From contig OX638159.1 in the NCBI GenBank assembly GCA_951804945.1, positions 65,844,001-65,908,000 of the forward strand: DNA of 64,000 nt, in the 5' to 3' direction. Below are positions 25,350 to 36,889 of this stretch, piece by piece. The position numbers and the translations under genes were made by a program. Each line of letters opens with the position of its first letter. Position 1 is the stretch's first letter. Below the pieces are notes generated by a model, which searched no databases, was not told the DNA's origin, and worked only from the letters and a program-made list of their open reading frames with translations. This stretch comes from Podarcis cretensis. Taxonomy: Eukaryota.

Positions 25350-25572
25350 CTTTTGAAGACCAGGACAGTGCTGTGGATGACAGAGACAGCGACTACCGCA
25401 GTGAGACCAGCAACAGCATTCCTCCCCAGTACCACACCACCTCGCAGCCCAATGCTTCGGTGCACCAGTTCCCCGTGGCTTCCCGCCTGCAGCAGCAGGG
25501 GGCCCCCCGAGAGTGCTGTGTGGAGTCCCTGCACGGCTATGATTTGGATTACCACGAACGAGCAGCCATCAG
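25350..25572 (+). CDS. UNC13B: UNC13B internal exon (223 nt)
   Basis: ttctag acceptor, AG|gtaggt donor; [41 protein letters not shown]...ERAAI, a hallmark Munc13-1/ubMunc13-2 segment. Confidence 0.97.
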
Positions 25573-26919
25573 GTAGGTACCCACTTGGAACCAGGGCGTT
25601 TTCTTTCCCCCAACCACAAATTTATTGGCAGGAGAAACTCACCGTAAGCTACCAAGACTGGGGCTGGCTGCTTCAGACTATCTTGTGGTCAGGTTCTTAA
25701 AAGAAAAGCCATTCTGCTGCTTCAGGGGTGACAGAAGAGCAGTGAGCAACAGCTGCCAGACACGGGTCCCGCCCCCCCCCCCCAGAATAGCCCAATGGGA
25801 GCAAAGAGAGCTTTGCAGCTGAGCCTCCTCCTTGCGAAGCAGAGCTGGTGGTAAGCAGTTCTTTTTGCTGTGGAATTTTGGGATCCCCAGGTTGTCGCCC
25901 TGAGTGACCAAGAGTGACTGACAATATGTGGACCAATTTCACTTGAGATTGCAAGGCGTGCTGCCCCTCAGGATGCCCCTCTTGCTGAGATTTGGCTTCT
26001 GTTGTCTCGCACCCATCCAGACTCCTACCATGATTGTGCAACCACCAGTCCCACACGCCACACACTTGCTTTCACTTTCCATTTTACGATACTAAGCTGT
26101 TTGAACCTTCTGTGTTGCTCTTGTCCTTCACGTCTCCCAACGTCTCCTTGCCTTTTTGAAGAAGGCGCCATAGCTTAGACTCCACTGTGAGTGGCCGAAC
26201 TGACCTGGAATCTGCATCACAGTCAAGTCAAATGACAAGCCGCCAGCTGTCATTAGAGAGCCGCCACTCACTAGAGGTGTCTGATAGGTGGGTGACCCTC
26301 TCCGAAGCCTCTGTGTCCGTGTCTCGTGACGTGGCTTTGGTCTGCTGGGGTTCCTGGGCTGGCTATCAGTCTTTGCATGAATTCATCCTCTTCCAAGTAT
26401 AGTTGCCGGCTGGCTGTTTTCTATTGCTTCTCTTGTTCCAACTGGGTTTTTGTTGCTGTTGACTTCCTCCTTAGGAAAAATGTAGAACGTTTCTATCAGC
26501 CCTCAAAAGAGAGAAGTGATGCAAATCATTAGCTTTCCTCCAAACTAGGCCTTTAAAATGTTAGATCTATCTAATTTATTCTCATATAATTACTTTGGTT
26601 TCTAATTGTCCTGTCAATACTGTAGCTGGAGTTTTTAGGATTCATGTTTCCAATTCTGACTTGCCCATCATAATCTTGTTTGTGCTGTCCACATGGTTAA
26701 TGGAAGTAACCCCAAATAATAATTGGAACAGTTCCTCATTTTGCGCCTTATCAACATGGTTGTTGTTTTTAATTTATTTACCTCTAAAGATAAACCACAA
26801 GTAAGATAATGGGTTTTTTCCTGTTTTGTCACATTGCAAATTTAATTAATTGATGCACTTTATTGTGTGCTTAGTGTAAAAACTTATTATTAGTCTGTTG
26901 CAAATGCCCCTTCTTAAAA

Positions 26920-27230
26920 TCAGGAGGTAAGAGTCCTGCTGGATCAGGCCAGTGGCCCTCCTTCTCCAGCATCCTGTTCTTACAGTGACTGACCAGATGC
27001 CTGGGAGAAGCTCAGAAGGAGGACCAGAGCCCTCCGCTCCACTCCGCTCCTCTCCTCTCCTGCAGTTTCCAGCAACTGGGGCTCAGAAGCATCTCTGCCT
27101 GCGACCGCGGAGGCAGAGCAGAGCCATCATGGCTAGTAGACTTTGATAGCCCTTCTCCCCCATGAATTTGTCTAATCCTCTCTTAATCCAAGTTGGTGGC
27201 CATCATCGCTTTCTGTGGGATAAACTCCGT
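26920..27230 (-). mobile_element. Old CR1-related 3' fragment
   Basis: CCTGCTGGATCAGGCCAGTGGCC..CCAGCATCCTGTTC..; related copy at ~59920-60117. Confidence 0.55.
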
Positions 27231-27630
27231 TGAGACGCTCCAGAAAGTGACTTGTAACATTTTAGGTAGCTGCTCATTGACATTTTTAATCCGCAATTCC
27301 TGTTCTTAACAGAAGCTTATAAATAACATACCATACATCACTTTATAGTATACATAACACTGGTATACATGTTTCGTGCTCTCCTACAACCCTACTATTT
27401 AGCTGCAGTAATAGTAAAAGAGAGATTCCTAACATTTCATGTTAATAAATGGATTCATTGTTATGATGTTTTAATATACTTTTTGCATGTGATTCACGAT
27501 ATCATTTGGTCTTTATGAAATGCTCCTTTGCAAGTTTTGTGTTTAAAGCTCTTTTTTCACCCCTCCTGCCCTTTCTTTTTTTTCTTTGCCCTTCTGTCCT
27601 TCTTATATTTCCCCCCTCCACACGTATCAG

Positions 27631-30600
27631 ACCAGGATCTTTAGTTAGCAATGGGAAAGTCAGGATCATTCCATTTGATTACGAAGTTGGCCAAGAACAG
27701 GAAGAGTGTGAAGAGAACTATGAGGAATTAGGCAAACAGTTAATAGAAGATTTTTTAGAAAAAAGTCACAGGACTAGAAGTTCACAGGGACGAAGGAGCC
27801 CAAGGCTCTCAAAAAGGGAGAACTTTGGCCATCATGAAAGAGGAAGATACTCACGGAAGGCTTGCCCAGAATCAGGACATCCTGATGTTCCTTGCTATCC
27901 AGAGGAATATGACACAATAGACAGGAGAAGAAAGAAGAAGCTGAGATATAACAATTTTGAAGAATGTGAGCGAACTATACTGCAAAGCAGTAGTAACCGG
28001 AGATTTTCATCAGGCAGCATTAAAGCAAGAACTGAACATAACCTATATCCTGATTATGATGAAACTGAGAAATGGGGCAGCAGCCCCATTGAAAGTGAAG
28101 AACAGTTACCGGAATATCCAGTTCTGCGTCCATACAAGAATGGCCTTCTAGTCAAGAGTGGCAAGTTGTCCTCTAACCAACGCGCAAAGCATGACTCAGG
28201 ATCAGTCCATTTTGATGGTGAAAATGAGATCCATTCAGAACAGCCAGCTCACTCTTTTGTGCCATTGGGTGCCCTTAAAGAGTTTGGCAGCTGTTCATCC
28301 AGCGTACTCCTGTACTCCCCAGTTTCTGATGATGATGATGAAATGGAAGAAATAGCAATACTTTCCCAAGCATGGCGTGAATCCAGTGTTCGCCATGTTG
28401 GAGACCTTACTGACACCCGTACTGGAAGTGCCATATCCCTGTTACCAAGGGACAAAAACTCACATAGGATGAGAGGAGGAAAGCACGGCTTTCTTAAGCA
28501 AGACTTGACCCTCTCTCCTGTTGAAGAGCCAACGGAAGAATACGTGGACACAATGGATGAACTGCAGTGCTTAGTTGAAACTGTGTCTGAATACTTAGCT
28601 GAAAAAGAGGAGGAGATTAGCAAATTCGAAACCCTTCCTGCGAGCAAAAACGCAAGCGATTGTGCCTCTCCCAAACTGGCCGGTGCTGATAAGTTGGCGG
28701 AGGAAAGTGCTCCTTTGGAACATGCAAAGCCAGCCGCTTCTGCTGCAGAGGAGAGTGAGGGCAGCAAAGGCATAACAGAGGCATTGCCAGACTTGTCTGG
28801 GGTGAAGAACACAGTCAGCTCCTTATTTAGTTCTTTCACCGAAAAAGTGGGCTCAGGAACAAAGCACTTAACAGCCTCAGTTGAAAAAATTGTATCTCCC
28901 ACACCAGAGAAATCTGAAGCCCCTGGTCAACCTGAGGGAGGCCTCACAAGTCTGTTTTCAAGTAAGCCTAAGTCTGAGGGTGCCTCTCCAGAACTGAAAG
29001 CAGAAAACAAATCGGAGGCCAAGCTGTCCACGGCAGCTTCCCCTTCTGTGACCCAGAGTAGCCGTGAGCGAGAAGCCAGTGATGCCAAGGCCAACATCCC
29101 AGAAAAGACGGCAGGAGACGACAAGGCTCCTCCAAGTGTCCAGGATGCTTCAGCAAACTCTGCTCCACCCTCTTCTCTGGACCCCAGCTCAGTCGTGAAC
29201 TCCGTCTTAGGCATGTTCAACCCTTTGAAAATCTTCTCCGAAAAGGAAGCACCGAAAAAAGAGACTGCAAAACAGGAGGAGGCTGGGAAGGTGGAAGCCA
29301 CGCATGCCAGTGCTTCTGAAGCCAAGGCAAGTGGGAAGGCAGCTGAAGGCAACGCGACGAAACCCACCAACGTTGCGCCTCCCGAAACGAGCAAGAGCGA
29401 GGCAGAGGCGAGCGCAGGCAGCGGCCCCGTCTCCTCCATCTTTGGCAAGCTGTCGAGCTCCGTTAGTTCTTTCAGCTTGAAAGCCAGTTTTGAGAGCCTG
29501 GCTGTTCCCAAGCAGCCAAGTGGGCCGCAGAAGGCTTCTGATGTGCCGCTGCAGGCCACAAGTCAGCCAGATAAAGTTGTTAAAGAACACCCAGGCATGC
29601 CAAGAAATCCACAACCTGCAGGGAAAGTGCCAGAAAACAAGCCAAGTGAAGCCAAGAAGGAGACTGGTAACGCTCCGCCGTTGGAGCAGGGGGAACCATC
29701 TGAGAGCTTTTTCAGCCCACTTAAGAAATCCTTCAGCCAGTTGCTACTCCCTTCTTCTGCTACTGAAACTGTGCCAAAGGAGCCACCACCGGGCTTGGGG
29801 AAAAGTCACCGTTCTGAAGATGATGTCAGGAAAACAAGCTCCGCAAACAGCGAACCCAACTTCCCTTTCACCAGTAAGCTCCAGATTCCCTTTTTGAGCG
29901 GTTTTGGCTTTTCAGACAAACCACCGCAGGACAACAAAGAGAAGCCAGGAATTTTCACTTCCTTCTTGAAAGCTGCTTCTGTGGAAAACCTGACAGCTTC
30001 AAAAGATCAAACTGCCCCACCAAGTTTTAGTGGCAAGCCACCAAATGCTGAAGAGGGTCACAAAAGCAGCAATGCAGAAGCTGCCAAAATGGAGTCGTTA
30101 AAGTCTCAGGCAGTTCCCGAGGCACCGCAGAGAAAAGAGGAGCCGATGAGGAAGAAAGAAACCAGTAAAGGAGATGATCTGGGTGCACCAAAACGTGGAG
30201 ATAAAGACCAGGGTGCCTCAGACACTTCAAAAATTGCACACATGGATCATGATGCCAAACGCATGGGGGCTCTGGACCACAAAGATTCCAAATGCAGGGG
30301 GGAGCTGGCAGCCCCCACAAAAGAACCTGACTTAAATGCTACAGCAGGAAAGCCAGTGCTTCCTGGTGGAATCCGAGAGGACCAGGTAATGGATGATACT
30401 CAGAAGAAGGCCCCACAGCCAGGGCAGGGGTTGCTCTCGGGCCTCTTCCGGCGGGCGTCTTCAGACCACATAACCCACACGGAAGAGTCCAATGCTAAAA
30501 ATGAAACAGACAGCCAGAAGAGCAGATCAGCTGGCTTACTTTCTGGATTATTTAGGTTTGCTTCAAGTGAAAACCTGACCGAAACTATGCCAGATAAGGC

Positions 30601-33600
30601 AAAATCAGGCTCTCTGGGCATAATGAAAATTTTTGAGAGGAGCGAAGAGACTAGTTCTGGTGACAAGTCCGTTGGCTCACATGTGACTCCTGGTCCCCAA
30701 GAAAGCACTGGGGGGAAACAGGAGACGGGCAGCTTCATAAAGAACTTCATGCAGAGGCCAAAAGAAAAAGCGGAGGAGGCAGTGACCGAGACTGCGAAGG
30801 CGAATGGTCATTTGCCTCACCCAGAACTGAGCAAAATGGACAGCGGACATGGTCCCGTCTCTTGGCAACCCCCCTCTCAGAATGCTTTAAGCTCACAGCC
30901 AAAGATACAAGACTTATCGGGGCAGCCAACTCTCTACAGACAACCTACGGATTCCAATATTTATCAAGCAGTTCTCAACGAAAGGTCAAATGCATTTCTC
31001 AATTCCTCTTTGCGGAATGCTAAATGGTATGGCCACTCGGAGCAGCCTCTTGCTCTTGAGGAAACCAGGAGCCACTCTAGCCTTGACTGGGAATATGATA
31101 CAGGAGCATTTTCTCTCAATGGCCACCAGGTGTCCTTGCCCGTTTACTACGTCTTGCAGCAGAATTCTGTCCCACTGGCTGAGTTTCTGGAATGGCCAGA
31201 CTCCAGTGATGCCGTAGTGAACTTGTGTAAAAAAGATGACAATGCCAATGTCGTGGATTGGAGGTCAAATGCCAGTTTTGATGCCCTGAGCATAGATTTC
31301 AGTGTCATGTCACACGAATCGTTTGATCAGTTAGACTTACAAGATTTAGGTCTAGAAGAAACTGAAATGTGGGCAACACATTCTCTGAATGGAAACTTTC
31401 CTCCATTTGATGACTGCAGCTATGTTTTGGAAGAGATGCCCATGGACTTAAGCTATTCGTCGGCATGTGATGGCAATATGTGGGCCTTAATTGATCAGGA
31501 GTGCTTGAGCTTGGAAGGCAGTTTTGTCTATTCATCTTATAGCCAGGAGTACCAGGACTGGCTGATGCTGCTTGAGAAGGGCGTGTGGTGGCCATCGGAA
31601 GATGGCGATTGTGGATATTACATGTACAGGGACGGTCAGTTTGTTTATTCTCTGCTCACCGACCCCACTGGGCAGTATGTCTACATTTGCACTCCTGACA
31701 CTTACACCTACCCAGACTACTGGGATTATAATTATCCGCAGAGCATTTTGCAGAGCACTGTCTTGGAAGATGACATGATTGCCGTTTGCGGTTTCAAAGT
31801 GCCTCTTGGTAATGAAGACGAGTTATTCTGGTTTGCTGAAGAGGAGCAATTGGATAATTACTCTGTAAACAAACCACTTGATTTGTCTGTAGCTCTGCAG
31901 AGAAGTGATCAACTTATGAACATGAATTTAGAGACCTTTTCGCAGATGTTTGAGGAGTCCATTTATTACCAGAGAGAGCAGCCTTTAGACTTTTCAGGGT
32001 ACAAACTTCAAAAACTCAAAGTAGACTTTAGGCCTGAGAATGACATGGAGTGGCGCTCAGAAGAGCCTCCCCTGACCCTTGACCTTAGAGTTCACTCCAG
32101 GGTGGCTTCCAGTGGGAGGCTAAAAGATGATGCTCTGCCCAAACATCTGGACAGGACCCCTGCTGTGGCAGTTTCTGAAAGTGCACAGGCAAGACGGTTT
32201 GGTTTCCATATATTCCAGTCTTCTGCCAAGCCTGAGCCTTCATCGGCGTCTCAAAGTGTTACAGAAGTCAAAACCACCGAAGAAGATAAAAAGCCACCTC
32301 TGAATAAAGTTGCATCTTTATTCTCTGCTTTGGGTGGCCTGATGGGTAAGGGTTTGGAAACGCATGAGACAGTGGAAGATGCGGCTGTGAAGAAAGAAGA
32401 ACCGGTGGTGTTGGGACACAAAAACGATGCTCTTCCAACTATGCCACCCAGGAAAACAGGAGAGGATATGCAAAACCAGCAGCACACTGAGCATGAACAA
32501 GAGAGAAAAGAGAGAGGCAGATTAGTTAAGTCTGTTAGGGATGAAAAGCCAATGATTTCTCAGAAAAAGCCTCAGCTGGTGAGGTCTTCCTCTCAGCTAA
32601 GCCAGCGTCCCGTGGATAGCAAGACCAGTCAGCTGGATAAAAGTGTTAAGCCTGCTCCCCTCCCAAGTCAACCAAAGCCCAAAGTGGGTGAGGATGAACC
32701 CAAGAAAACCCAGCCAGCCCCCAGCCAAGCGCCCACGGAGGCTGAGGGCACGTTGTTTAAAAGTGCTCTCAAGATTCTCAGCCTGGGAGAAGACTCCTCC
32801 ACAACTGCAGCACCCAATAAAAGTCAAGGCCCCGGGTTCTTTGATTTCTTTAAAACGCAGGTCAACAAAGCCCCACAGCCACCGCCAGCACCCCAAACAA
32901 ATCTGACGAAAAATGAAGCTGAGAAGAAAATGCCTCAGGAGAAAGTGGAGCCCCCAGGCATTTCATCATTCTTTGGTTCCATAGGGGATCTTTTCAAAGT
33001 CGATGCAGCCCCTGCCCCACCAAGTGCTGCTGCTCCACCAAAGAGTGGAACCCACACCTCCCTGAAACCGAATGACAACGCGGACCAGCGTAGCAGAGAG
33101 CCAAGTAAGAGCAGCACTCCTGCTCCTCAAATCCCCGTGGAGCAGGCTCGTGGGGAAGCTGCCCAGAAGGCCGCAGTCCCTAAGGAAGAACAGCATGGCA
33201 AAGTAGGCAAGGAAGCTGCTCCAGTGAAGAAGGAGGACATCCCCACCGCTGGGAATGCAGAACCCAAGCCTCCCATGCAGGCAGGACCTCGAATGGACCA
33301 AGCAAATCGCTCTCCAGGGCAGCATGGCCATGGGCCAGCTGTTGCGCCGGGACCGCAAGGCCATGCAGGAGCCATACCTGGTAAAACTCAGCCAGGAAAA
33401 GCCAGTCAGCCACCCAGGGAGTCTGGGTTTAGCCTGCCTTTTGGCTTGTCACAGGCAGCACCTTCGAAGCCTCCGCAGGCCCCGCAGCCGGCTGGCAAGA
33501 GCATCTTCTCCTCCTTCTTCGGTGCCCCAGAGAAAGCCCCTGCCCCAGCTCCAGGAGCTCCTAATGCCAAGCCCCCGGAAGCAGAGGGTCTGTTCAAGAT

Positions 33601-36450
33601 GCCTTCTTTCTTTTCCGGAGGGCCCACCGCAAAGAAGAACGTGCCTCAGAGCAGCTCCAGCTTCAGCTTTTTCAACCTGACCTCCTTCCTGGATGACAAA
33701 CCACCGGCAGCTTTTCCTGACAAGGGGAATATTGCAAAGCCACCTCAGCAGCAAGCCAGCAACCTGGGAAGGCCGCCTCAACAGCAAGCAGACGCAAAGC
33801 CATCTATGAAGCAGTGTGTTTCTGTTGACTCTGGCATTGGACTTGCCAGACAGCAGGGCTTGAAGGATAAAGAGGCAGCGGCGGGTGTTATAGAAGCAGT
33901 ACTTGGAAAGCAAGAGGCTGTTGGCCTGGAGCACAAGGCAAGTGAGTTAAAAACTCCTGAGGCTGAGCATGCTGCGGCAAGTGCTTCAGAAGTGGAAAAT
34001 GAGGTAGAGGTACCTTTTGTGGCCAGTAAACCTCCTGATGATGGTACAGATAGAGAAGACCACTCAGTCTATCCTGATCCTGGCTCTCAGGTCCCTACGC
34101 TGCAGGAAGACATTGCGCCTTCCCTTCCGGAGATTCCACAACCAGAGGAGCAGCTGCAAGACAATGCAGAAAAGAGTGGTGGTATTGTGGTGTCCTCTGA
34201 GAAGGAATTTGTTCCTTTAGTTGGGAACGAGACTTTTGAAAAGGCAGAGCCCGGTCCAGTTTGTGATGAGACCTCTGTGGCTCTTGAGCCATCTCCTGCT
34301 CCTGGAGACCTTTCACGGGAGGTTGTACCTGAAGAAAAACCAAGCGCCCCTGAAGTCAAGCCCCCGGAGCCCAAGCAACCTGATAGGACCCCAAATACTG
34401 CAGGAGAGCAGCAGGCTCAGGGCCAGAGGCCTCTCCCTCAAATGGCAGCAGCAACACCTAACCTGCAGGAGAAACCTAAAGAACCTGAGGCTGACAAATC
34501 AGTTCTAGATTCCTCAGTTGAAATGTTTTCCAGCTTCATGACGAAGATGAAACCAACCAAAACATTATCTGGCTTCTTTTCCCAGCCTCAGACTCCAGCA
34601 GCTCCTAGTGCCCAAAAGAAGAGCACTTCGTTTTTCGGCCTTTCCTCCCTGCCCACTGGGCCTCCTCCAGCATTTACAAGTGATCTCTTTGGCATTTTTA
34701 AAGGAGCAACAGATGAGACCCTTTCAAAGTCTGCAGGGAAGACCGCAGGCACTTCAAAACCCCAGGAAATGAGCCCCAGGGCAAAGGAGGCTGTGGGCCC
34801 ACTTCCTGGCAAAGGTCTCGCAAAACAAGATAAAGCCTCTAGGGATGAACTTTTAGGGACAAATGCCGGCAGCGTTTTGAAACAACCGGACCAAACCTCT
34901 AGGGCTGAACCTACAGAGAAAGAAGCTAGCAGTGACTTGAAACAAGATGCCCCTTCTGCTTTAGCAGATGAGAGTTTGGGAAACGAATGTAGAGCAGTAT
35001 TGGAAGCTGAAAGCAGTGGAAGACCTGAACATGGTCTGGAACCCTCCCTTAATGCTTCAGAAACTTTAGACTCAAGTAGGGATCAGGGCCCTGAAGTGGT
35101 ACAGCTGGACACAAACTTACTGGCATCTGATGAAGCAGGGAAGGCTGCCCCGTGTAGTCAAGAGGGACATGATGCAGTTGAGACGGTGGTGCTGCAGGAG
35201 AAGAGTGAAGTGCCTGTGGAGCCCTTAGAAAATGATGCTGTTCCTGCTGTTGAAGAGCAAGTGAGCCCGGCAGGAGAAACAGACGTTGGCCAAATGGATT
35301 TGGACAGTACACATGAGCTGGAACCCAAGGTTGGTGAGGAAGATGAACACCTGAAACTGCCAGAACTGACGGATACTTCACTAACCACTGAAGAAGTAAC
35401 TATAAAGAATGAGGCAGATGCTGATATTTGCCCACCAGACACGTTTGAGACGCTGGAGATGGAACCCAAAGCTGCTGCAGATGAGGCCCATGACTTGCCC
35501 CATCAGGATATAGAAAAGGTCCCTGAAATAAAATCTGATCTTCCTCCTGAGCAGAAAGAGCCTCTAACCACCAGCGAAGCAGCCCCAGAAGCTGCTCCCT
35601 TGAAAAGCAGTTTGGCTGGTAAGAGCAAGCCAGCCAGTGCTCCTACAGAGGCCAGCAGCACCAAGCCCATGTTTGAAATTCCAAGCATGCCCACTTTGCC
35701 CAAATTCGGCTTCATGTCTTCTGCAGACAGCAGCAAGCCATTTGGCTCCTTCTTCTCTGCACAGCCGCCTTCGGCAAGCAAGCCTGCGCCTGAGCCAGGC
35801 CTCGTGTCCAGCTTCAACAAGTTTTCCTCAAGTCTGTTTGGTGGAGGAAGTGATGAGAAAGCAGGTAAAGTAGAGGGCACTCCGGGTGCTGTGTTTGGAA
35901 AGAAGCTGGACTTCTCATTTCCGTGGCAGAAAGATGCCAAGGAGGCAAGTCTCAAGAAGGAACCAGATGTGCCAACACCAAAAGCTTCCTCCAAACAGGA
36001 GGTGGCCCCAATTGCTTCATCCAAACTAGATTTGAAGGCACCAGAAGCTGTCTTGAAAGCCGAGGAACAAGCAGTGGATGTGACCGGGGCTGATGGGAGC
36101 CCAAACCTCTCTGCCTCTGACCAGCCAGCTGACAGTGCTGCTGATTCAGACCTTTCTTCTAAGCAGCCTGACAGCAAGAGCAACGAATGCTTCGATGGTC
36201 CCACACCTGACATTCCGGTTGCGCCCAACAAGGAGCTGGAGCTTGAGGCCTCCAGAGAAATGGAAGATGAGCCAAGCACCATTTCCAGTGAGCCTCCTGG
36301 GCTCCCTTTGGAGGAACCAGCAGAAGGCGCCACACCGGTTCTGGATGAAGTAGAGCAGAAGGAAAGTGTCCCTTGTCCAGAAACGGAAACACTTGCTACT
36401 GGACTGCAGCCAGCGGAGCAGAGTAGCCCTGAGCCACTCAGGAAGAAAAG
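27631..36450 (+). CDS. UNC13B: UNC13B giant alternative exon (8,820 nt, 2,940 codons, phase 2-2); read-through stop at 36470-36472
   Basis: Uninterrupted frame; ~80-nt AG-free pyrimidine tract and atcag acceptor (27629-27630) in the phase required by exon 25350-25572; candidate AG|gccagt GC donor at 36451 in the phase required by exon 38506. From memory, human UNC13B has a long isoform with a multi-kb exon at this position. The 5' boundary is firmer than the 3' boundary. Confidence 0.85.
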
Positions 36451-36889
36451 GCCAGTAGCCAAAACGGCATGATAAATGGTGCCAACTTGTGAGCCATTTA
36501 TAATGCAAGTGCCGTAACAGTAGATGCCTGACCTCGTAGATCAGACTCCTCCTCTAGGCTGTGTTTGGCATCAGTAGTACCCAGTGGTAGGTAGAGTTGT
36601 GAACGCTAGTTGCTAGACTGCCCACCCAGAGCCCTTCCTGCCCTTCTCAACTTCTGGTTTCCTTTGTTCCAAAAGGCTGCCATGACTCTTCTCCTTTGCT
36701 CTCCCTTTGTGCTGTGTCCTTGTGAGTGAGCTGCTTTGAGTATTAGTTTCATTAACCTTCCATAGCCTAATTGTGTGCGTGAGAAAACAACTTGCACCTC
36801 TAGATGACATGGTGGGAGGGAGGAAATCGGGGGCTCTCTTGGTTTGCAGAAAGCTTAGTTGGACAACATACCAGGCATTCACATTTTAA

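What the first reader, a model, noticed from the sequence alone, without database searches (positions are those of the whole stretch)
31211..32089. Cluster of CtBP-binding PxDLS motifs in the giant exon: a possible Munc13-2 link to RIBEYE/CtBP
Seen: PMDLS (31439-31453), PLDLS (31874-31888), PLDFS (31982-31996), plus degenerate VVNLCKK (31214) and TLDLR (32075), all within ~290 aa. Known: PxDLS is the canonical CtBP1/2 ligand; RIBEYE, the synaptic ribbon scaffold, contains CtBP2 as its B domain; CtBP1 is anchored at active zones; ubMunc13-2 is the Munc13 reported at photoreceptor ribbon synapses. Inference: the giant isoform could bind CtBP/RIBEYE oligomers multivalently, tying the priming factor to ribbons or sequestering the CtBP1 co-repressor at synapses. 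I am not aware of this being described.
Basis: inference. Interest (0 to 1): 0.82.

Follow-up and report, generated by a model that had tools for sequence, protein, structure and literature searches.

The report
Conserved CtBP-type motif cluster in UNC13B
The giant optional exon of the synaptic priming gene UNC13B (Munc13-2) carries a cluster of short motifs, unchanged from sturgeon to mammals, that match the docking signal for CtBP/RIBEYE. This is a good, untested candidate link between the priming machinery and CtBP-based synaptic scaffolds.

Summary
The window is UNC13B of a lacertid (wall) lizard. One 8.8-kb exon (27631-36472, +) lies between the ubMunc13-2 N-terminal exons and the bMunc13-2 first exon.

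All five motifs sit at the stated coordinates, inside a 460-residue conserved island in an otherwise fast-evolving, disordered exon.
- PLDLS is the most conserved pentapeptide of the whole exon (rank 1 of 3204 windows, 58 vertebrates).
- P[MIV]DLSYSS is unchanged in all tetrapods and basal ray-finned fishes.
- PLDFS, xLDLR and VxNLCKK (fish: ALNLSxK) keep their positions.
- The PLDLS-PLDFS spacing is fixed at 34-36 residues.
- A PGDLS outside the island is not conserved, which serves as an internal control.

AlphaFold2 predicts no confident fold over the motifs. Pfam, PDB and Atlas searches find nothing.

The papers I found know multivalent PXDLS clusters only in Piccolino and Bassoon. None links Munc13-2 to CtBP.

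Binding and expression in ribbon-bearing cells could not be tested: no CtBP sequence was available, and the RNA data were inconclusive. My verdict is a probable CtBP-family docking module (about 0.45). The ribbon-specific reading is plausible but unproven.

The parts
27631..36472 (+). Giant UNC13B exon. It has a polypyrimidine tract and AG acceptor at 27629-27630. The frame stays open to the TGA at 36470-36472.
   Evidence: Orthologous exon found in more than 170 vertebrate proteins.
30917..32299 (+). Conserved island of 461 residues. Residue numbers in this report count from here.
   Evidence: 62-64% identical in birds and turtles, about 40% in placentals, 45-48% in amphibians and sturgeon. 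Mean column conservation is 0.49 against 0.36 for the whole protein.
31214..31234 (+). Motif m1, VVNLCKK (island residues 100-106). Tetrapods have V[VMI]N[LF]C[KQ]K and ray-finned fishes have [AV]LNL[ST]xK.
   Evidence: N102 is nearly invariant in both alignments. C104 is invariant in the 27-sequence alignment.
31289..31303 (+). Extra loose copy, SIDFS. Birds have SLDLS and turtles SIDLS. It is absent in mammals.
31439..31453 (+). Motif m2, PMDLS. It fits the CtBP ligand consensus. The context EE[LMV]P[MIV]DLSYSS is present in all tetrapods, sturgeon, bowfin and gar. Eel and arowana have [AV]MDLS. It is lost in other teleosts.
31541..31699 (+). Small helix plus beta-meander core (SQEYQDWL...GVWWPSEDGDCGYYMY...GQYVYICTPD). 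It is the only part of the island with a reproducible predicted fold, and it lies between m2 and m3.
   Evidence: AlphaFold2 gives pLDDT 50-65 in both jobs. Column conservation is 0.75. No Pfam, PDB or Foldseek match.
31874..31888 (+). Motif m3, PLDLS. It fits the CtBP consensus; from my own knowledge it is the same pentapeptide as the adenovirus E1A ligand.
   Evidence: P320 and L323 are invariant, and L321, D322 and S324 are at least 90% conserved in 59 sequences. It ranks 1 of 3204 pentapeptide windows.
31886..31978 (+). Predicted helix-turn-helix spacer between m3 and m4 (SVALQRSDQL / NMNLETFSQMFEESIYYQ).
   Evidence: Helices at island residues 324-333 and 338-354, pLDDT about 50. The m3-m4 spacing is 34-36 residues in 39 species.
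31982..31996 (+). Motif m4, PLDFS. Tetrapods have P[LM]DFS and teleosts have x[LVIM]DF[ST]. The F at position 4 is outside the published consensus.
   Evidence: It ranks 44 of 3204 windows.
32075..32089 (+). Motif m5, TLDLR. Tetrapods have xLDLR and fishes have x[FVIM]DL[ST]. It is an isolated peak of conservation in a variable stretch.
   Evidence: D389 and L390 are invariant in 59 sequences. Profile. Spacing to m4 is 25-32 residues.
34301..34315 (+). PGDLS outside the island. It is a chance match, not part of the module, and serves as an internal control.

Best explanation
The island in the giant UNC13B exon is a conserved docking module. It has five (six in sauropsids) short motifs of the form hydrophobic-[D/N]-[L/F]-[S/T/C/R]. 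Two of them (P[MIV]DLS and PLDLS) are textbook PXDLS ligands.

The motifs lie in flexible sequence around a small beta-rich core. Most likely they insert as short strands into the PXDLS-binding cleft of CtBP-family proteins: CtBP1, CtBP2 and the CtBP2-identical B domain of RIBEYE. These targets are dimers, tetramers or filaments, so several weak motifs on one chain would bind by avidity, as Piccolino's motif cluster does.

The exon is spliced into the C2A-bearing (RIM-binding) 'ub' form of Munc13-2. The module would therefore tie a priming factor to CtBP-based scaffolds at the active zone.

Shown here: the motifs, their enrichment, their deep conservation and fixed spacing, the lack of a confident predicted fold over them, and the isoform context.

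Inferred: that CtBP-family proteins are the partner, that binding is multivalent, and that it happens at synapses or ribbons.
For: The motifs are at the stated places and enriched.

Conservation over bony vertebrates:
- PLDLS ranks 1 of 3204 pentapeptide windows and PLDFS ranks 44. m1, m2 and m5 are in the top 6-9%.
- The motif table for 38 named species is. In fishes the loose pattern hits only the conserved positions.
- All six loose-pattern matches in the 2946-residue exon lie in the island (the pattern was defined after seeing the data).
- The non-island PGDLS is not conserved.

PMDLS and PLDLS match the ELM-style CtBP consensus (typed from my own knowledge).

AlphaFold2 gives pLDDT below 55 at every motif in two runs with different alignments. 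Only residues 209-260 form a reproducible mini-fold.

Spacing m3-m4-m5 is 36 and about 31 residues. This is within the 25-45 residue spacers of Piccolino's PXDLS motifs, which cross-link RIBEYE B filaments.

Bassoon and Piccolino show that active-zone giants use this motif.

Full-length models start with the ubMunc13-2 C2A and continue into C1-C2B-MUN. ubMunc13-2 is placed at rod active zones beside the ribbon.
Against:
- Only m2 and m3 fit the published consensus. m4 has F at position 4, and m1 and m5 lack the leading P or G.
- m2 is lost in most teleosts.
- m3 and m4 sit in a 50-residue block that is conserved throughout, with a rigid spacing of 34-36 residues and predicted helices. That is more constraint than a five-residue ligand needs, and it would fit a fold-on-binding domain for another partner.
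- AlphaFold2 used only 27-29 sequences, so 'no fold' is weak evidence.
- Expression of the exon in CtBP/RIBEYE-rich cells is not shown. Three of the four runs laid look like genomic DNA, and the fourth gives only small pieces.
- From my own knowledge, loss of Munc13-2 has only mild effects at mouse photoreceptor ribbons (Cooper et al. 2012).
Confidence: 0.45

Rival explanations
1. The island is a binding or folding module for something other than CtBP. The conserved core, the block AVCGFKVPL..EDELFWF and the PLDLS-helix-helix-PLDFS unit would form one domain, alone or on binding an unknown active-zone partner. The D-L-S strings would be structural strands, and their likeness to PXDLS would be coincidental.
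For: Conservation runs almost continuously from residue 209 to 370, not only at the motifs. The m3-m4 spacing is fixed at 34-36 residues in 39 species. AlphaFold2 predicts helices directly after PLDLS and before PLDFS, and a beta core at low but reproducible confidence. m1, m4 and m5 do not fit the CtBP consensus.
Against: No confident fold appeared in two predictions. There is no relative in Pfam, PDB, Foldseek or the Atlas. m5, m1 and m2 are isolated peaks of conservation in variable sequence, which is the signature of linear motifs. Recurrence of one five-residue pattern five or six times, and nowhere else in 2946 residues, is not expected of an ordinary globular domain. To my knowledge no other reader domain is known for PxDLS.
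Confidence: 0.4
2. The motifs are chance strings in a long low-complexity exon and have no function.
For: One of the three strict PxDLS strings in the exon (PGDLS, 34301) is exactly that. About 0.14 strict matches are expected per shuffled exon.
Against: The shuffle test on the island gives P = 2.5e-4. Every island motif is kept in position from sturgeon to mammals, while the surrounding exon averages 36% column conservation.
Confidence: 0.02

Closest known systems
Piccolino (ribbon-specific Piccolo isoform): C-terminal cluster of seven PXDLS or PXDLS-like motifs that binds the RIBEYE B domain
   Same: Both are giant, mostly disordered active-zone proteins with several conserved PXDLS-type motifs on one chain. 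Spacers are a few tens of residues: 25 and 45 in Piccolino, 36 and 31 for m3-m4-m5 here. Piccolino also carries an S/T/G-plus-bulky-hydrophobic ALPS helix (VTGKLFGFGASIFSQASNLIST) that binds vesicle-like liposomes. The UNC13B exon carries many strings of the same style.
   Different: I detected no sequence homology. Here only two motifs are canonical. The motifs flank a small conserved beta core and a helical hairpin instead of plain spacers. Binding to RIBEYE and presence on ribbons are shown for Piccolino and untested here. UNC13B adds a catalytic priming part (C1-C2B-MUN).
Bassoon/Piccolo binding of CtBP1 and RIBEYE at conventional and ribbon active zones
   Same: An active-zone scaffold holds a CtBP-family protein at the synapse. 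The 2026 preprint states that Bassoon contains PXDLS motifs that bind RIBEYE's B domain.
   Different: It is a different gene family, and the interaction there is shown by experiment.
Nuclear multi-PXDLS co-repressor partners (adenovirus E1A PLDLS; ZEB1/2, RIP140, ZNF217). This entry rests on my own knowledge.
   Same: m3 is the same pentapeptide as in E1A. Two to four motifs per chain give avidity for CtBP dimers and tetramers.
   Different: Those partners are nuclear DNA-binding or adaptor proteins. UNC13B is a cytoplasmic, membrane-associated priming factor.
Known Munc13-2 isoforms: ubMunc13-2 (C2A, binds RIM) and bMunc13-2 (binds ELKS)
   Same: It is the same gene. The giant form uses the ubMunc13-2 N-terminus and the common C-terminal half.
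   Different: The roughly 2950-residue insert is not part of either described isoform. I found no paper on it.

Membership tests
UNC13B (Munc13-2) orthologue, giant-exon isoform | Flanking exons encode the Munc13 C2A domain and the following N-terminal region, and the giant exon is orthologous to that of annotated UNC13B models. | tested here: met
   C2A-type and '[16 protein letters not shown]' exons lie upstream. Identity to Zootoca UNC13B isoform X1 is 93%, and more than 170 UNC13B hits carry C2, C1 and MUN Pfam domains. Full-length models read C2A - giant exon - C1-C2B-MUN.
CtBP-binding PXDLS linear motif (ELM LIG_CtBP_PxDLS_1; consensus typed from my own knowledge) | Sequence fits P[LVIPME][DENS][LM][VASTRG] or the G-variant. 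| tested here: met
   PMDLS and PLDLS fit. PLDFS, TLDLR, VVNLC and SIDFS do not fit and count only as motif-like.
CtBP-binding PXDLS linear motif (ELM LIG_CtBP_PxDLS_1; consensus typed from my own knowledge) | The motif lies in an accessible, non-globular region. | tested here: inconclusive
   pLDDT is 26-53 at all motifs in two AlphaFold2 runs. The alignments were shallow (27-29 rows), and helices are predicted next to m3 and m4.
CtBP-binding PXDLS linear motif (ELM LIG_CtBP_PxDLS_1; consensus typed from my own knowledge) | The motif is conserved among orthologues more than its flanks. | tested here: met
CtBP-binding PXDLS linear motif (ELM LIG_CtBP_PxDLS_1; consensus typed from my own knowledge) | Physical binding to the CtBP cleft, lost on DL-to-AS change or with cleft mutants. 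| not testable with these tools
   No CtBP sequence could be obtained. This needs a bench test.
Piccolino-type multivalent RIBEYE-B ligand | Several motifs on one chain, with spacers able to bridge neighbouring B-domain sites (about 25-45 residues). | tested here: inconclusive
   m3-m4 is 36 residues and m4-m5 about 31, inside the published range. m1-m2 (73) and m2-m3 (143, across the core) are longer, and the m3-m4 spacer is predicted helical rather than unstructured.
Piccolino-type multivalent RIBEYE-B ligand | Expressed in ribbon-bearing cells and located on or at the ribbon. | not tested
   The RNA look-up gave no run on record as RNA. Three of the runs laid cover the intron as well. The only hint is a mouse retina splicing table that lists an 8.4-9.0 kb Unc13b exon.

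The most novel reading that the evidence does not exclude
The giant ubMunc13-2 isoform is a second, Piccolino-like ribbon or active-zone tether. Its PXDLS-type cluster (m1-m5) would anchor it to RIBEYE B-domain or CtBP1 assemblies. Its roughly 15-20 conserved S/G/F-rich amphipathic (ALPS-like) strings, spread over about 2500 disordered residues, would capture highly curved synaptic vesicles. Its C-terminal MUN domain would prime them. One polypeptide would thus join scaffold, vesicle capture and priming.
Probability: 0.2. Interest if true: 0.85.

Novelty: new member of a known kind. Interest (0 to 1): 0.62.

Why it matters
How vesicles held on CtBP/RIBEYE-based scaffolds are handed to the priming machinery is an open question at ribbon synapses. 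[quoted passage not shown]

A PXDLS-type cluster unchanged for the whole history of bony vertebrates, inside an undescribed giant isoform of a priming factor, gives a concrete hypothesis. It can be tested cheaply with five peptides, one recombinant island, and the RIBEYE-B and CtBP1 assays that already exist.

If the partner is not CtBP, the island is still the best-conserved part of a roughly 2950-residue insert whose function is unknown.

Tried and rejected
Family and fold searches found nothing:
- Pfam on the whole exon, the island and the core gave no hits. Two hits had E above 0.09 and fell below their cut-offs.
- A PDB sequence search gave one hit at E = 0.42.
- The ESM Atlas gave no usable hit.
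- Foldseek against the PDB with the second model gave nothing at E <= 0.001, and the model is of low confidence anyway.

Structure: two AlphaFold2 jobs gave mean pLDDT 35 and 46. I use them only to say that no confident fold covers the motifs. A deeper 59-row alignment (A2) was too large to send.

RNA evidence:
- The look-up of sequencing runs returned no run on record as RNA.
- In read laying, X1, X5 and X10 cover the intron (25.8-27.4 kb) as much as the exon. They look like genomic DNA of a related species.
- X15 has a contig that stops matching exactly at the AG acceptor at 25350, so it is probably RNA. On the giant exon it gives only pieces at 30497-30647 and 30970-31144.
- The 8 unmatched letters after 30647 are not at a GT donor.
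- I treat expression as undecided.

Photoreceptor exon: the Musashi-dependent photoreceptor exon of mouse Unc13b is a 39-nt cassette at a different place in the gene. It is not the giant exon.

Not run:
- No claim here rests on absence of relatives.

Phyletic gaps: cartilaginous fishes, lamprey, coelacanth and lungfish were not among the named hits. That is no evidence of absence.

The giant exon and its parts were searched by reference only.
Full report
WHAT IS THERE

The finding lies in one open frame of 2988 codons, 27506-36472 on the + strand. A long polypyrimidine tract ends in an AG at 27629-27630, so the exon proper starts at 27631. The frame closes with TGA at 36470-36472.

Upstream ORFs encode the end of a Munc13 C2A domain ('[35 protein letters not shown]', about 880-1050). 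They also encode the next N-terminal exon ('[38 protein letters not shown]', about 25350-25500).

A word search with the region around the finding returned 174 proteins, and the named ones are almost all UNC13B. The best is Zootoca vivipara 'protein unc-13 homolog B isoform X1' at 93% identity. Earlier notes of the scan call the genome a wall lizard. They place the bMunc13-2 first exon at 62.5 kb of this window.

Full-length gene models of birds, turtles, marsupials, placentals and gar all have the same layout. They begin with the ubMunc13-2 N-terminus (MSLLCVRVKKAKLQG..., C2A), contain the giant exon, and continue into the common C1-C2B-MUN part. The Zootoca model stops at the end of the exon, as this window's frame does.

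THE OBSERVATION

All five strings are at the coordinates given.

Chance does not explain them. Strict PxDLS occurs twice in the 461-residue island against 0.025 expected (P = 2.5e-4). PxD[LFMIV]S occurs three times against 0.065 expected.

- A third strict PxDLS, PGDLS at 34301, is not present even in Zootoca. It shows what a chance match looks like in this exon.
- A sixth loose copy, SIDFS at 31289, is SLDLS in birds and SIDLS in turtles, and is absent in mammals.

CONSERVATION

I aligned the island (window 30917-32299; residue numbers below count from there) with named non-primate orthologues. There were 31, 38, and whole-protein alignments of 27 and 59 rows.
- m3, PLDLS (320-324): P320 and L323 are invariant and L321, D322 and S324 are at least 90% conserved in 59 sequences, from lizards to salmon. 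It is the most conserved pentapeptide of the whole 3208-residue frame of reference, rank 1 of 3204 windows.
- m2, P[MIV]DLS[YC]SS (175-182): present in every tetrapod, sturgeon, bowfin and gar. It weakens to [AV]MDLS in eel and arowana and is lost in other teleosts.
- m4, P[LM]DFS (356-360): rank 44 of 3204. Teleosts have x[LVIM]DF[ST].
- m5, xLDLR (388-391): D389 and L390 are invariant. Fishes have xΦDL[ST]. It stands as an isolated peak in variable sequence.
- m1, V[VMI]N[LF]C[KQ]K (100-106): fishes have [AV]LNL[ST]xK, which is closer to a classical CtBP-type string.

In the fish segments a loose pattern hits only these conserved positions. In the lizard exon all six hits of that pattern lie in the island, and there are none in the other roughly 2500 residues. 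I defined the pattern after seeing the data, so its P value is optimistic.

Spacing is also kept. m3-m4 is 34-36 residues in all 39 species and m4-m5 is 25-32. m1-m2 is about 70 and m2-m3 about 140.

STRUCTURE

Pfam, PDB sequences, the ESM Atlas and Foldseek give nothing.

Two AlphaFold2 runs used different alignments: 27 rows, mostly tetrapods, and 29 rows with ten fishes. They agree on the following:
- Nothing reaches pLDDT 70.
- A helix plus four or five strands at residues 209-260 (SQEYQDWL...GVWWPSEDGDCGYYMY...GQYVYICTPD) reaches 50-65.
- Two helices fill the gap between PLDLS and PLDFS, at 324-333 and 338-354, with pLDDT about 50.
- Every motif itself is coil, with pLDDT 26-53.

This is what conserved linear motifs in flexible sequence look like. 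The alignments are shallow, though. The block 288-370 is conserved throughout, so a fold-on-binding unit cannot be excluded.

WHAT IS KNOWN

Three papers bear on the motif:
- A 2026 preprint shows that seven conserved PXDLS motifs in Piccolino, with alternating spacers of about 25 and 45 residues, bridge PXDLS sites on neighbouring RIBEYE B-domain filaments and drive ribbon-like assembly. One motif alone does nothing. The preprint also notes that Bassoon has PXDLS motifs that bind RIBEYE-B (10.64898/2026.04.28.721253).
- MINFLUX work places ubMunc13-2 in the rod active-zone complex beside the ribbon.

No paper in the searchable library joins Munc13-2 or UNC13B with CtBP1, CtBP2 or PXDLS, or describes a giant Munc13-2 exon.

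MECHANISM

The best reading is that the island is a multivalent docking module for the PXDLS cleft of CtBP-family proteins. m2 and m3 would be the primary ligands, and m1, m4 and m5 would be weaker auxiliary sites that add avidity on dimers, tetramers or filaments.

The m3-m4-m5 spacing (36 and 31 residues) is in the range used by Piccolino. I put this reading at about 0.45.

The main rival, at about 0.40, is that the same conserved block serves another partner or folds as a domain, so that the likeness to PXDLS is coincidental. Its support is the continuous conservation and rigid spacing around m3 and m4, and the non-canonical residues in three motifs.

Chance is excluded.

WHAT COULD NOT BE SETTLED

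Binding: no CtBP sequence could be obtained under the tools' rules, so no complex was predicted.

Expression:
- The run search found no run on record as RNA.
- Three of the four runs laid cover the intron as well, so they look like genomic DNA of a related species.
- The fourth (X15) has a contig that stops matching at the AG acceptor at 25350, so it is probably RNA. It gives only small pieces at 30497-30647 and 30970-31144 of the giant exon.

A lead from the literature: in the splicing table of a mouse retina study, the Unc13b locus lists a downstream exon from 43,169,967 to 43,178,334 or 43,178,928 (8.4-9.0 kb). It sits behind a 33-nt cassette that is included more in normal retina than in photoreceptor-less retina (PMC4991804, supplementary file 4). 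That this is the giant exon is my inference from its size and order. The table merges reference and assembled models, so it does not prove retinal expression.

The known Musashi-dependent photoreceptor exon of Unc13b is a different, 39-nt exon.

SIDE OBSERVATION THAT BEARS ON FUNCTION

The rest of the exon is variable except for about 15-20 short conserved strings rich in S/G/T and F/L. Examples are GVKNTVSSLFSSFTEKVGSG, GLLSGLFRFASSENL (twice), KVASLFSALGGLMGKG, GISSFFGSIGDLFK, SIFSSFFG and GLVSSFNKFSSSLFGG (consensus lines; coordinates).

A crude amphipathic-helix screen finds 7 such segments against 0.65 in shuffles.

They resemble the Piccolino ALPS motif VTGKLFGFGASIFSQASNLIST, which a 2026 paper shows to bind vesicle-like liposomes and proposes as the vesicle tether of ribbons (PMC13394108). 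A protein with a PXDLS-type anchor, an array of ALPS-like strings and a MUN domain would be a scaffold-to-vesicle-to-priming link. This is speculation, at about 0.2.

VERDICT

- The kind of element is known: a multivalent PXDLS ligand.
- The carrier and its context appear undescribed.
- Interest is 0.62.

HANDLING NOTES

Primate hits and unnamed Logan clusters were not used in any alignment or script.

Noticed in passing
window 28268-35932 (for example 28793-28855, 29423-29476, 30428-30460, 30533-30565, 32294-32362, 32951-32998, 33500-33523, 34514-34585, 35795-35845): About 15-20 short S/G/T-plus-F/L amphipathic strings are conserved across tetrapods, and many across fishes, in an otherwise variable disordered exon. 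A crude screen finds 7 against 0.65 in shuffles. They resemble the ALPS vesicle-binding motif of Piccolino.
   Followed up: partly
window 28511-28639: 'LSPVEEPTEEYVDTMDELQCLVETVSEYLAEKEEEISKF' is the second most conserved block of the exon (windows at 0.94-0.97 in 58 species). It is an acidic, probably helical segment of unknown role.
   Followed up: no
window 27908-27940 and 28124-28165: There are two more conserved strings near the start of the exon: the basic cluster 'YDTIDRRRKKK' (it looks like a nuclear-localisation or lipid-binding patch) and 'LRPYKNGLLVKSGK'.
   Followed up: no
window 31541-31699: An orphan mini-domain (a helix plus a Tyr/Gly-rich beta meander, 'GVWWPSEDGDCGYYMY..GQYVYICTPD') is highly conserved and has no match in Pfam, PDB or Foldseek.
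   Followed up: partly
window 36440-36480: The exon frame ends in TGA TAA directly after '...RKKRPVAKTA', as in the Zootoca model (3208 residues). Bird, turtle and mammal models instead splice on into C1-C2B-MUN. Lacertids may therefore make a C2A-plus-insert protein without a MUN domain. This is the subject of the scan's note s1-832918.
   Followed up: partly
window 26850-27250: Depth is very high (up to several hundred), with many odd joints and loose ends, in all runs laid. This is an interspersed repeat in the intron just upstream of the giant exon.
   Followed up: no
window 30497-30647: In the one probably-RNA run (X15), short contigs of depth about 20 cover only this 150-base piece of the exon (it includes GLLSGLFRFAS). 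They end at 30647 with 8 letters that do not match, and there is no GT donor there. Unexplained.
   Followed up: partly
mouse Unc13b, mm10 chr4:43,165,743-43,180,642 (PMC4991804, supplementary file 4): A retina splicing table lists an 8.4-9.0 kb Unc13b exon behind a 33-nt cassette. The cassette's inclusion is 0.25-0.33 in normal retina and 0.04-0.17 in photoreceptor-less retina. This is a lead for where the giant exon is used.
   Followed up: partly
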